From Octopus bimaculoides (taxonomy: Eukaryota), in contig NC_068998.1 of the NCBI RefSeq assembly GCF_001194135.2, forward strand, positions 40,300,976 to 40,364,975: 64,000 nt of DNA. The letters run 5' to 3'. The position numbers were made by a program, and so were the translations under genes. This document shows, piece after piece, positions 23,230 to 24,060 of this stretch. Numbering within the stretch: the stretch's first letter is position 1; each line of letters opens with the position of its first letter. The notes below the pieces were generated by a model. That model ran no database searches. It was not told the origin of the DNA and was given only the letters and a program-made list of their open reading frames with translations.

Positions 23230-24060
23230 TGTTGCTGTTTAGCCCAGGGTGCTATTGATTGAACTAATTTCTAATGAAATGCATTCCAAATATGGCCATC
23301 ATGTTCTCTTAGTCTACATATTCTAATATGTCCGTTTTTTAAAGAGTGTGTAGTTGGAAAAGTTTGAGTTATATTTGGCTGCTATTTCCAGCAAATCAAG
23401 CAGCCATATCAATACTCTTTCCTTTGGCTCGTATGTGTGTAAGTATGAGTGTGTGTGTGTATTGTACAGAAACAAGTGAAGAGAAGGTGAAGAGTTTTAG
23501 AAGGGGCTATGTTGTAATTGTACCATGTCGGGTTAGAAACAAGAAAGGCAGCAAATGTAATGACTTTATTTGCAGTAGTAAGACTTAGCAAGCCATCTTG
23601 ATTAGAGAGTTGTGGGTTAGATGATTCTAAGTTAGTGAAAATCCTCTTTGCCAAACACACAGAAAATCCAATTGTGTAGGGTTAAATATCTCTTAGTTGT
23701 TGGTATGTGAGACTTCATCTAAGTGTTGTAGTCAAAGATTTTCATCACTTGGAGATATATGTTTAAAGTTGTAATTGTTTTTTTGTTGTTTGTTGTTTTT
23801 TTTTTTGTTCTTATTTAACCCCCAAGTTAGATTTGATCTTGCAGGCTTTTGATCAAAAGTCAGTCATCACTATACCTTATATTTGTTACATGTTTCAGTC
23901 TTTGGTTTAGTTGATCAAATTAACATTTTCTAATATGTCCATTTGTTTTAAGAGTGTGTGGTTGGGAAAATTTGAGTATTTCCAACAAATCAAGCAGCCA
24001 TATCAATATTCTTCCTTTGGCTTATATATATGTGTAAGTATGAGTATATTTGTGCATGTG
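23230..24060 (-). repeat. Two family E copies inside a local duplication with about 600-bp period
   Basis: 23325-23450 and 23930-24045 share CAAATCAAGCAGCCATATCAATA..CCTTTGGCT and the flank TGTGTAAGTATGAGT beyond the element end. Confidence 0.8.

What the first reader, a model, noticed from the sequence alone, without database searches (positions are those of the whole stretch)
23366..23432. Family E head fits an HDV-like self-cleaving ribozyme
Seen: all family E copies are decayed, yet most keep CTGCTA-GAAA-TAGCAG, a 6-bp GNRA-capped hairpin (plus-strand positions near 627, 13801, 16116, 23379, 24627, 36120, 52779, 53490). A by-eye consensus of the heads (sense strand) is YYRAGCC AAY GAGGGA GCC TCTACGT GGT YGCTYRA C CTGCTA GAAA TAGCAG CCAAA TCTCCCTC. 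This is the element order of an HDV-like ribozyme: P1, P2, P3, L3, P3', P1', P4, J4/2 with C..RA, P2'. This copy keeps CGAGC/GCTTG (P1); the 16098-16165 copy keeps AGGGAG/CTCTCT (P2). Knowledge: HDV-like ribozymes process the 5' ends of R2, RTE and Ingi/L1Tc retroelements, and the L1Tc signature as I recall it has CC-TCAACGT-GGT, very close to CC-TCTACGT-GGT. Inference: family E is a non-tRNA short retroposon whose 5' end is made by a ribozyme. I know no description of this for an octopus repeat but cannot check the literature. Caveats: P1 would start with a pyrimidine and the P1.1 partner is unclear.
Basis: partly seen in the sequence, partly recalled or inferred. Interest (0 to 1): 0.78.

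Follow-up and report, generated by a model that had tools for sequence, protein, structure and literature searches.

The report
Possible dead ribozyme in octopus repeat
An old, decayed short retroposon of octopus genomes starts with a ~70-base module that could fold like an HDV-type self-cutting RNA, but the helix that sets the cut site is weak, some copies keep sequence upstream of the predicted cut, and nothing shows it ever cut.

Summary
Family E is a real ~220-bp repeat: 20 copies in the window and more in Octopus vulgaris, about 72% identical to consensus.

Well supported:
- an 8-bp long-range helix (P2, P=0.0006);
- the GAAA-capped hairpin (P4);
- a GCC/GGU stem with loop UCUACGU, 11 of 12 bases as in the proven L1Tc ribozyme core;
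- C-C-A-A right after P4.

Weak points:
- P1 is only 5 bp (P=0.03-0.10), and there is no convincing P1.1.
- No Rfam family matches, even at E<=10.
- There is no covariation, because the copies decay neutrally.
- The presumed catalytic core is the least conserved part of the element.
- About seven copies start at the predicted cut site. At least three share a 14-base leader upstream of it.

Verdict: partly supported. It is an HDV-like ribozyme relic with probability about 0.4. The main rival is a non-catalytic, LINE-derived 5' module. If real, it is a new member of a known kind; NARTc, SIDER and R2-SIDE elements already carry such ribozymes. No LINE partner was found.

The parts
23231..23432 (-). 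Focal family E copy, whole element from head to tail
   Evidence: nhmmer hits 23439-23231 and 23427-23232; sequence read. Identity to consensus is 65%.
23366..23432 (-). Head module of the focal copy (the finding's coordinates), my consensus columns 15-80
   Evidence: Alignment to the head consensus.
23427..23431 (-). Proposed P1 5' strand, CGAGC
   Evidence: Read. Pairs with GCTTG: C-G, G.U, A-U, G-C, C-G.
23397..23401 (-). Proposed P1' strand, GCTTG
   Evidence: Read.
23403..23415 (-). Decayed P3-L3-P3' (GTA TTGATAT GGC; ancestor GCC TCTACGT GGT)
23379..23394 (-). P4 hairpin TTGCTG-GAAA-TAGCAG, with a GNRA loop
23373..23378 (-). J4/2 CCAAAT, holding C-C-A-A directly after P4 (position of the putative catalytic C)
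23231..23245 (-). 3' tail GGGCTAAACAGCAAC
   Evidence: The tail columns are the best conserved in the family (0.88).
53317..53571 (-). Family E copy with the 14-nt leader TTATATGATTTTCC upstream of the predicted cut site, and G at column 46
62609..62794 (-). Family E copy with the leader (TAGCATTTTCC) and G at column 46
52748..52966 (+). Family E copy starting at consensus column 16; candidate target-site duplication CACATGCATG / CACATAAATG
15940..16170 (-). Family E copy keeping P2 as AGGGAG/CTCTCT; starts near column 13-16
13649..14275 (-). Three family E copies head to tail (14275-14079, 14063-13846, 13848-13649). Each head abuts the previous (CAA)n-type tail.
24571..24910 (-). Two adjacent family E copies (24910-24708 and 24706-24571). 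The second is preceded by CCCCCCCACCA.
23815..24025 (-). Duplicate of the focal copy; not an independent insertion
   Evidence: Shared flank, 88.6% identity.
35960..36171 (-). Family E copy starting about column 11-16, after a tail-like CCAAAATAAC
38659..38876 (-). Family E copy preceded by CCCCCCACCA
2151..2349 (+). Family E copy starting at about column 15
597..742 (+). Family E copy, 3' part lost in a microsatellite
37363..37509 (-). Family E copy, partial
40347..40472 (-). 5'-truncated family E copy with a long (CAA)n tail
62019..62440 (-). Family E copy with about 230 nt inserted between head (62440-62379) and body/tail (62154-62019)
34544..34634 (+). 5'-truncated family E copy, 3' end only
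46623..46686 (-). 5'-truncated family E copy, 3' end only

Best explanation
Family E is an old, now dead, LINE-dependent short retroposon of Octopus, about 220 bp long. It is SINE-like, or an internally deleted LINE, and has no tRNA head. Its 3' end is a GGGGCTAAACAAC(AAC)n tail. That tail was recognised by a partner reverse transcriptase and tended to land in A/C-rich or microsatellite DNA, including other copies' tails.

Its first ~70 nt are most likely the relic of an HDV-like self-cleaving ribozyme, probably inherited from the 5' end of the partner LINE. The parts, in my consensus columns, are:
- P1: UGAGU (16-20) with ACUCA/GCUCG (45-49).
- P2: CGAGGGAG (24-31) with CUCCCUCG (74-81).
- P3: GCC/GGU closing the 7-nt loop L3, UCUACGU.
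- P4: CUGCUA-GAAA-UAGCAG.
- J4/2: CCAAAU, whose first C would be the general acid.

In an active master copy the fold would form during read-through transcription from host DNA. It would cut just 5' of column 16 and leave a 5'-OH RNA that was then copied into the genome by target-primed reverse transcription.

Shown here: the family, its orientation, the consensus, and the complementarity of P2, P3 and P4. Inferred only: P1 and the cut site, catalysis, the LINE origin, and the role in making 5' ends.
For: - Family and orientation: 20 copies in the window, a conserved tail and 5'-truncated copies. It is also present in O. vulgaris.
- Helices in the consensus: the proposed register gives 65.8% paired cells against 22-51% when slid.
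- P2 is 8 Watson-Crick bp abutting P3, P=0.0006; with the majority consensus it is 7 bp, P=0.006.
- The P4 hairpin is far beyond chance.
- The core CCTCTACGTGGT matches L1Tc CCTCAACGTGGT at 11 of 12 bases, at the same structural place. Local-alignment P=0.028.
- L3 has the same 7-nt form U..ACGU as mouse Cpeb3 (UUCACGU, primer) and L1Tc.
- C-C-A-A follows P4 directly, as the catalytic C-N-R-A does in the family.
- Short P1, 0-2 nt J1/4, 1-bp P1.1 and a pyrimidine at +1 all occur in active retrotransposon ribozymes.
- About seven copies begin at column 15/16 with unrelated upstream DNA. One of them has a candidate 10-bp target duplication.
- The three clear leader-bearing copies share G at column 46. 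That change would break the central P1 pair.
- The head has no tRNA or other small-RNA origin.
- LINE clades known to carry such ribozymes (R2, Dong-R4, RTE) are active in O. vulgaris.
Against: - P1 is only 5 bp with mismatches at both ends, and a run that long arises by chance at P=0.03-0.10.
- A competing register, GUCGA/UCGAC (columns 19-23 with 47-51), pairs as well.
- There is no credible P1.1: the single J1/4 base C51 cannot pair with the first L3 bases.
- No Rfam ribozyme family matches. There was nothing at gathering score over the window, and nothing at E<=10 on two 161-nt stretches holding well-kept heads.
- There is no covariation; 216 of 500 shuffles reach the observed pairing.
- L3/P3/P1' are the least conserved part of the element (0.65). 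The P4 loop (0.87), normally the dispensable part, is the most conserved.
- Nested folding energy is unremarkable, z -1.7 to -2.3.
- Three copies surely, and up to six possibly, carry a shared 14-nt leader upstream of the predicted cut, so the cut did not define their 5' ends.
- With the plain majority consensus the L1Tc similarity is not significant, P=0.24.
- No LINE with this head was found.
Confidence: 0.4

Rival explanations
1. The head is a structured but non-catalytic 5' module taken from a LINE 5' UTR. It would act as an internal promoter or a protein-binding or stability element, as proposed for the 'LP-SINEs' of gastropods and bivalves. Full-length RNA starts about 15 nt upstream (TTATATGATTTTCC...), and copies starting at column 15/16 or later are ordinary 5' truncations.
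For: - LP-SINEs with a ~70-bp LINE-derived head exist in molluscs.
- Three copies start within 2 nt of each other at column 1-3, suggesting a defined upstream start.
- 5' ends run as a continuum from column 1 to about 32.
- The best conserved part is the P4 hairpin and what follows it, not the L3/P3 core.
- The nested fold (P2 enclosing two hairpins) needs no pseudoknot.
- There is no Rfam hit.
Against: - It does not explain the 11/12 match of the P3-L3 core to L1Tc at the right place, nor C-N-A-A right after P4.
- Promoter and ribozyme roles are not exclusive: L1Tc Pr77 is both.
- Homology to LP-SINE heads could not be checked, because no sequences are held.
Confidence: 0.35
2. Only the P4 hairpin and the P2 complementarity are real features of the repeat consensus. 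The HDV-like reading is a chance fit helped by a permissive topology and repeated self-complementary TCGA motifs. The head has no RNA function.
For: - P1 is at chance level, P=0.03-0.10.
- TCGA occurs three times in the reconstructed head, so several alternative pairings exist.
- There is no covariation.
- Folding z-scores are modest.
- The L1Tc match depends on inferred CpGs that no copy retains at columns 38-39.
Against: - P2 (P=0.0006) and P4 are not chance.
- Several independent features coincide in the right order and spacing.
- The TG/CA/TA mixture at columns 38-39 (8/5/4) is best explained by an ancestral CG.
Confidence: 0.17
3. Family E is a retrozyme-like or other ribozyme-bearing tandem repeat (hammerhead or twister), or a classical tRNA/5S/7SL-derived SINE.
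For: - Unit size is about 220 bp, and head-to-tail arrays occur. Animal non-LTR retrozymes are 150-300 bp tandem units.
Against: - There is no hammerhead or twister core in the consensus.
- No Rfam hit of any kind at E<=10.
- ARAGORN finds no tRNA-like sequence.
- Most copies are dispersed. Their tails and 5' truncation point to LINE-type insertion into tail-like targets.
Confidence: 0.04

Closest known systems
L1TcRz / Pr77 hallmark of trypanosomatid L1Tc, NARTc and SIDER elements
   Same: A ~77-nt 5' module on both a LINE and its short non-autonomous derivatives. The P3-L3-P3' sequences are CC-UCAACGU-GGU there and CC-UCUACGU-GGU here. P4 follows P1' with 0-1 nt between. It has a pyrimidine at +1 and a minimal P1.1.
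   Different: L1Tc has a perfect 7-bp P1 and proven Mg2+-dependent cleavage at +1. Family E has a 5-bp P1, no assay, no known LINE partner, and some copies with sequence upstream of the predicted +1. The hosts are unrelated, so any likeness is probably convergence on a constrained core.
R2 ribozymes and R2 'SIDE' non-autonomous derivatives
   Same: An HDV-like fold at the 5' end releases the element from a co-transcript. The short derivatives keep the ribozyme and the 3' UTR. Short P1, mismatches and 0-2 nt J1/4 are tolerated.
   Different: R2 is specific for 28S rDNA and its P1 often uses target sequence. Family E is dispersed in microsatellite-rich DNA, and its core is not the conserved part.
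CPEB3 intronic HDV-like ribozyme
   Same: A 7-nt L3 of the form U..ACGU, a weak P1.1, and C-N-A-A after P4 (and my own knowledge of the human sequence).
   Different: It is a single-copy conserved intronic element with a 7-bp P1, not a repeat.
LP-SINEs of gastropods and bivalves (Matetovici et al. 2016)
   Same: Mollusc SINE-like elements with no tRNA head. Their first ~70 bp come from a LINE 5' UTR, and they have short tandem-repeat tails.
   Different: That head was interpreted as a promoter, and it has not been reported in cephalopods. Sequence homology to family E could not be tested.
Hammerhead-bearing SINEs and retrozymes (Schistosoma Sm-alpha, animal non-LTR retrozymes)
   Same: Short non-autonomous repeats, often tandem, that carry a self-cleaving RNA.
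   Different: A different ribozyme class; no hammerhead core is present here.

Membership tests
HDV-like self-cleaving ribozyme | Nested double-pseudoknot order P1-P2-P3-L3-P3'-P1'-(J1/4)-P4-J4/2-P2' | tested here: met
   On the 20-head alignment, 65.8% of cells pair in register against 22-51% when slid. The order and spacing are present in the consensus.
HDV-like self-cleaving ribozyme | P1 of about 6-7 bp, whose 3' strand directly follows P3' and sets the cleavage site | tested here: inconclusive
   Five contiguous pairs (columns 16-20 with 45-49) flanked by A.A and C.C mismatches, P=0.03-0.10. A competing register exists. A 4-bp P1 is known in an active R2 ribozyme.
HDV-like self-cleaving ribozyme | P1.1 mini-helix between the start of L3 and J1/4 | tested here: not met
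   J1/4 is one base (C51), which cannot pair with U34/C35. A 2-bp P1.1 (U34-A50, C35-G49) is possible only by shortening P1 to 4 bp. L1Tc manages with 1 bp.
HDV-like self-cleaving ribozyme | 3-bp P3 closing a ~7-nt L3 with the conserved core nucleotides | tested here: met
   GCC/GGU with L3 UCUACGU in the CpG-aware consensus. L1Tc has UCAACGU and Cpeb3 has UUCACGU.
HDV-like self-cleaving ribozyme | Catalytic C in J4/2 (C-N-R-A) between P4 and P2' | tested here: met
   C68-C69-A70-A71 sits directly after P4, at 71-84% per-column identity. Its function was not tested.
HDV-like self-cleaving ribozyme | Match to curated covariance models (Rfam HDV, CPEB3, drz families) | tested here: not met
   0 hits at gathering score. 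No ribozyme family at E<=10 on two 161-nt stretches holding well-kept heads. Only decayed copies could be searched, not the consensus.
HDV-like self-cleaving ribozyme | Compensatory changes that keep the helices | tested here: inconclusive
   No excess over shuffles (216/500). The copies are neutral relics of few masters, so the test has no power.
HDV-like self-cleaving ribozyme | Site-specific Mg2+-dependent self-cleavage giving 5'-OH | not testable with these tools
   Needs in vitro transcription of the consensus.
Ribozyme-terminated retroelement | Copies begin at the cleavage site, with unrelated DNA upstream | tested here: inconclusive
   About seven copies start at column 15/16. Three share a 14-nt leader and three more may. 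The sample is too small.
Classical SINE | Head derived from tRNA, 5S, 7SL or snRNA with pol III boxes | tested here: not met
   ARAGORN finds 0. No small-RNA family in Rfam at E<=10.
LINE-dependent non-autonomous retroposon | Conserved 3' tail with simple repeat, 5'-truncated copies, dispersed insertion | tested here: met
   The tail is the best conserved segment (0.88). Four or more 5'-truncated copies exist. Target duplications were seen only by eye.
LP-SINE | About 70-bp head homologous to the 5' UTR of Nimb/RTE LINEs | not testable with these tools
   The sequences are only in figures, and no supplement is held.

The most novel reading that the evidence does not exclude
The unexplained ~70-bp 'LINE promoter' head is shared by mollusc LP-SINEs and by Nimb and RTE LINEs of insects, fish and turtles. 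That head may be an HDV-like ribozyme, with family E as its cephalopod representative. This would be one ribozyme module exchanged among LINE clades and SINEs across phyla. It would tolerate a very short P1, and leader-bearing subfamilies would arise when P1 is broken, as with the C46G change seen here.
Probability: 0.1. Interest if true: 0.65.

Novelty: new member of a known kind. Interest (0 to 1): 0.4.

Why it matters
If the head was an active HDV-like ribozyme, this would be the first such element described in a cephalopod repeat. It would explain how a promoter-less, non-tRNA retroposon family, part of the very large SINE fraction of octopus genomes, produced defined RNA 5' ends. It would also point to the still unknown partner LINE. 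The mechanism itself is already established for R2, RTE, L1Tc/NARTc and SIDER elements, so the gain is in range and annotation, not in principle. If it was not a ribozyme, family E is an ordinary old repeat with a structured head.

Tried and rejected
- Rfam: the gathering-score run gave nothing. The whole-window E-value run was swamped by microsatellite 'miRNA' noise. Two narrow runs on well-kept heads gave no ribozyme, tRNA or snRNA family.
- Metagenome scan for the hairpin plus J4/2 20-mer: two chance matches with no family E around them.
- Exact look-up of a window ORF found nothing on record.
- More octopus DNA was obtained through spurious 'proteins' of another, young SINE. That gave 120 kb of O. 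vulgaris but only five more heads.
- LINE partner: ORFs in the O. vulgaris loci are zinc-finger genes. An RT fragment in L006 used as a query returned only fragments from ENA and JGI assemblies among the 120 listed hits. The one looked up (L009) has no family E and no such head. No partner was found.
- A strict HDV descriptor of my own rejected even L1Tc, so I dropped it in favour of per-helix shuffle tests.
- The idea that leader-bearing copies are dimers with an upstream unit was rejected. The upstream DNA shows no similarity to the family 3' part beyond about 10 tail-like bases.
- A possible fourth unit after the 14275-13649 array could not be confirmed.
- Hammerhead, twister and retrozyme readings: no core motifs were found.
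- LP-SINE head comparison: no sequences are available.

Full report
**The observation**

The 16-base motif CTGCTAGAAATAGCAG occurs seven times in the window at two or fewer mismatches. Chance gives 0.05, and none of 100 shuffles reached seven.

On the minus strand the focal stretch reads CGAGCCAAAGGAAAGAGTATTGATATGGCTGCTTGATTTGCTGGAAATAGCAGCCAAATATAACTC. The hairpin is TTGCTG-GAAA-TAGCAG. The copy near 16157 keeps AGGGAG/CTCTCT.

**What the family is**

Iterated nhmmer finds 20 copies in the 64 kb, 16 of them on the minus strand. The consensus is about 205 bp, or about 220 bp with the longest 5' ends. It ends in GGGGCTAAACAAC followed by (AAC)n or (CAA)n.

- Several copies are only 3' fragments (40472, 62154, 34544, 46686).
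- Copies average 72.5% identity to the consensus. The focal copy is the worst at 65%, and it has a local duplicate at 24021-23815 that is not an independent insertion.
- Head-to-tail arrays occur (14275-13649, three units; 24910-24571, two units).
- Many 5' ends abut short tail-like A/C-rich strings. The DNA further upstream is unrelated to the family. I read this as insertion into tail-like targets rather than propagation as multimers.
- The genome is an octopus. ORFs of another, young SINE in the window match 'hypothetical proteins' of Octopus vulgaris and O. bimaculoides.
- 120 kb of O. vulgaris DNA fetched through those proteins holds further family E copies, five with heads.
- ARAGORN sees no tRNA-like sequence in the window.

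**The head consensus**

I aligned 21 heads with a transition-tolerant score and read the columns with CpG decay in mind. The inferred ancestor, numbered 1-91, is:

TTATATGATTTTCC ATGAGTCGAC GAGGGA GCC TCTACGT GGT CGCTCGA C CTGCTA GAAA TAGCAG CCAAAT CTCCCTCG AATCACATCC

His 'YYRAGCC AAY' is the majority-rule reading of my ATGAGTCGAC. The CG at columns 38-39 is inferred from TG 8, CA 5 and TA 4. No copy keeps CG there.

**Which helices are real**

With the 3' partners slid by 1-3 columns the figure is 22-51%.
- P2 (columns 24-31 with 74-81, CGAGGGAG/CTCCCTCG) abuts P3. A run that long arises in 0.06% of shuffles of the 3' segment, or 0.6% for the 7-bp majority version.
- P4 is the repeated hairpin.
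- P3 is GCC/GGU closing a 7-nt loop.
A five-pair run between the 7 nt after P3' and the 23 nt upstream arises in 3-10% of shuffles.
- A second register (GTCGA 19-23 with TCGAC 47-51) pairs as well, at 66.7% of cells. The head holds three copies of the self-complementary TCGA.
- There is no excess of compensatory change (216 of 500 shuffles reach the observed pairing). That is expected for neutrally decaying copies and says nothing either way.
- Nested folding gives P2 enclosing a small GGUC/GACC hairpin and P4, with modest z-scores of -1.7 to -2.3.

**Comparison with proven HDV-like ribozymes**

Oligo R77 in PMC1874656 reads CCCTGGCTCAGCCGGCCACCTCAACGTGGTGCCAGGGTCTAG....
- L1Tc's P3-L3-P3' is therefore CC-TCAACGT-GGT against CC-TCTACGT-GGT here, 11 of 12 bases and at the same structural place. 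As a local alignment against dinucleotide shuffles this gives P=0.028 with the CpG-aware ancestor, but only 0.24 with the plain majority consensus.
- The mouse Cpeb3 ribozyme has L3 UUCACGU (primer GTTCACGTCGCGGCC, 18 nt from the cut). All three loops are 7 nt of the form U..ACGU.
- In family E, P4 is followed at once by C-C-A-A, the C-N-R-A place of the catalytic cytosine.
L1TcRz begins with C and has a single-pair P1.1. R2 ribozymes have P1 of 6-7 bp, a quarter of them with mismatches, J1/4 of 0-2 nt and a highly variable P4. The active Nasonia R2 ribozyme has a 4-bp P1.

**What speaks against a ribozyme**

- No Rfam family reaches its gathering score in the window. No ribozyme family appears even at E<=10 on two 161-nt stretches holding well-kept heads. 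The reconstructed consensus itself could not be submitted.
- P1.1 cannot form with the single J1/4 base C51. A 2-bp P1.1 (U34-A50, C35-G49) exists only if P1 shrinks to four pairs.
- The conservation profile is the wrong way round. L3/P3/P1' and P2 are the least conserved tenths of the element (0.65-0.67). The P4 hairpin and J4/2 (0.81-0.87) and the 3' tail (0.88) are the most conserved. CpG decay explains only part of this.

**The 5' ends**

If a ribozyme made the 5' end, copies should begin at column 15/16 with unrelated DNA upstream.

- About seven copies do so: 52748, 16157, 23427, 2151, 36144, L008-4163 and 24906. Copy 52748 has a candidate 10-bp target duplication, CACATGCATG/CACATAAATG.
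- Three copies carry a shared 14-nt leader TTATATGATTTTCC upstream of that point and start within 2 nt of each other. They are 53571 and 62794 in the window and L003-9604 in O. vulgaris.
- Three more copies (597, 38842, 24671) may carry part of the leader.
- The three clear leader copies also share G at column 46, found in no other copy.
- That fits a subfamily whose ribozyme no longer cut and so kept its leader. It may equally just mark common descent.
- With about 14 informative heads this test is undecided.

**Explanations**

- I put 0.40 on a relic of an HDV-like ribozyme that processed read-through transcripts at column 15/16.
- I put 0.35 on a structured but non-catalytic LINE-derived 5' module of the LP-SINE kind.
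- I put 0.17 on a chance fit around a real hairpin and a real long-range helix.
- I put about 0.04 on other ribozyme classes or a small-RNA-derived SINE head.
- The first two are not exclusive: L1Tc's Pr77 is both promoter and ribozyme.

**Novelty**

Short non-autonomous elements with HDV-like ribozymes are known: NARTc and SIDER in trypanosomatids and R2 SIDEs. Reviews state that some SINEs use hammerhead or HDV-like ribozymes. I found no report for cephalopods or other molluscs. If real, this is a new member of a known kind.

LINE clades that carry such ribozymes elsewhere (R2, Dong-R4, RTE) are recently active in O. vulgaris. I could not find the partner LINE. The RT fragment in L006 led only to another, non-octopus assembly.

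**Limits**

Every structural statement rests on a consensus of 21 old copies from 184 kb. No young copies, no transcripts and no biochemistry were available. The decisive work is a genome-wide census of 5' ends and subfamily consensus sequences, a search for the partner LINE and for related heads in other molluscs, and a cleavage assay of the consensus against a C68U mutant.

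Noticed in passing
window 46963-47100 (+), 54327-54560 (+), 60749-60890 (+), 40560-40700 (-), 42240-42662 (-), 53615-53974 (-): A second, much younger SINE family (…GGCTTCTTTCAGTTTCCGTCTACCAAATCCACTCAC…). Its chance ORFs (MKPDGNTRLQS…, RRASFSFRLPNPLTRLW…) are annotated as 'hypothetical predicted proteins' in O. 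vulgaris and O. bimaculoides. These are annotation artefacts.
   Followed up: partly
window 13649-14275 (-) and 24571-24910 (-); L008 about 4003-4610: Family E copies sit head to tail, and many 5' ends abut short tail-like strings (CAAAATAAC, AACAACAAAATC). This suggests insertion into (CAA)n-like targets, including other copies' tails.
   Followed up: partly
window 13605-13640 (-): Directly after the tail of the last unit of the tandem array comes CTATAATTGTTTTAAGCCAACAAGGAACC. It resembles head columns 1-33 including the leader, but no further unit follows. Unexplained.
   Followed up: partly
window 38860-38876 (-) and 24690-24706 (-): Two copies carry the same extra CCCCCC(C)ACCA at the 5' side of the head. 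This is either a small subfamily or a shared 5' addition.
   Followed up: no
window, all family E copies: 16 of 20 copies lie on the minus strand. Possible causes are the tandem arrays or selection against one orientation inside a transcribed region.
   Followed up: no
window 23316-23462 vs 23923-24057: A local segmental duplication (88.6% identity over 132 aligned bases) that includes the focal copy's head and its upstream microsatellite flank.
   Followed up: yes
window 10167-10283: A near-perfect inverted repeat of about 45 bp arms, reported as a sub-threshold MIR6136-like hit on both strands. It looks like a foldback or MITE-type element next to an N gap.
   Followed up: no
window, many sites (e.g. 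48050-48550, 13230-13440, 22530-22970): Dense (CA)n, (TA)n and (CATA)n microsatellites give hundreds of sub-threshold Rfam 'miRNA' hits (mir-297, mir-466, mir-3149). These are composition artefacts. The window also holds many N gaps.
   Followed up: yes
window 62155-62379 (-): About 230 nt of unrelated sequence lies between the head and body of one family E copy. It is probably a later insertion.
   Followed up: no
L006 6860-7520 (-); L009 8426-11180 (+): A decayed non-LTR reverse-transcriptase fragment (…YADDLALIAES…, followed by a C-x2-C motif) sits in an O. vulgaris intergenic region. Its closest relative among the hits listed that I looked up is a LINE with a C-terminal PHD finger in an unidentified ENA assembly (ERZ25084522). 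Neither has the family E head or tail.
   Followed up: partly
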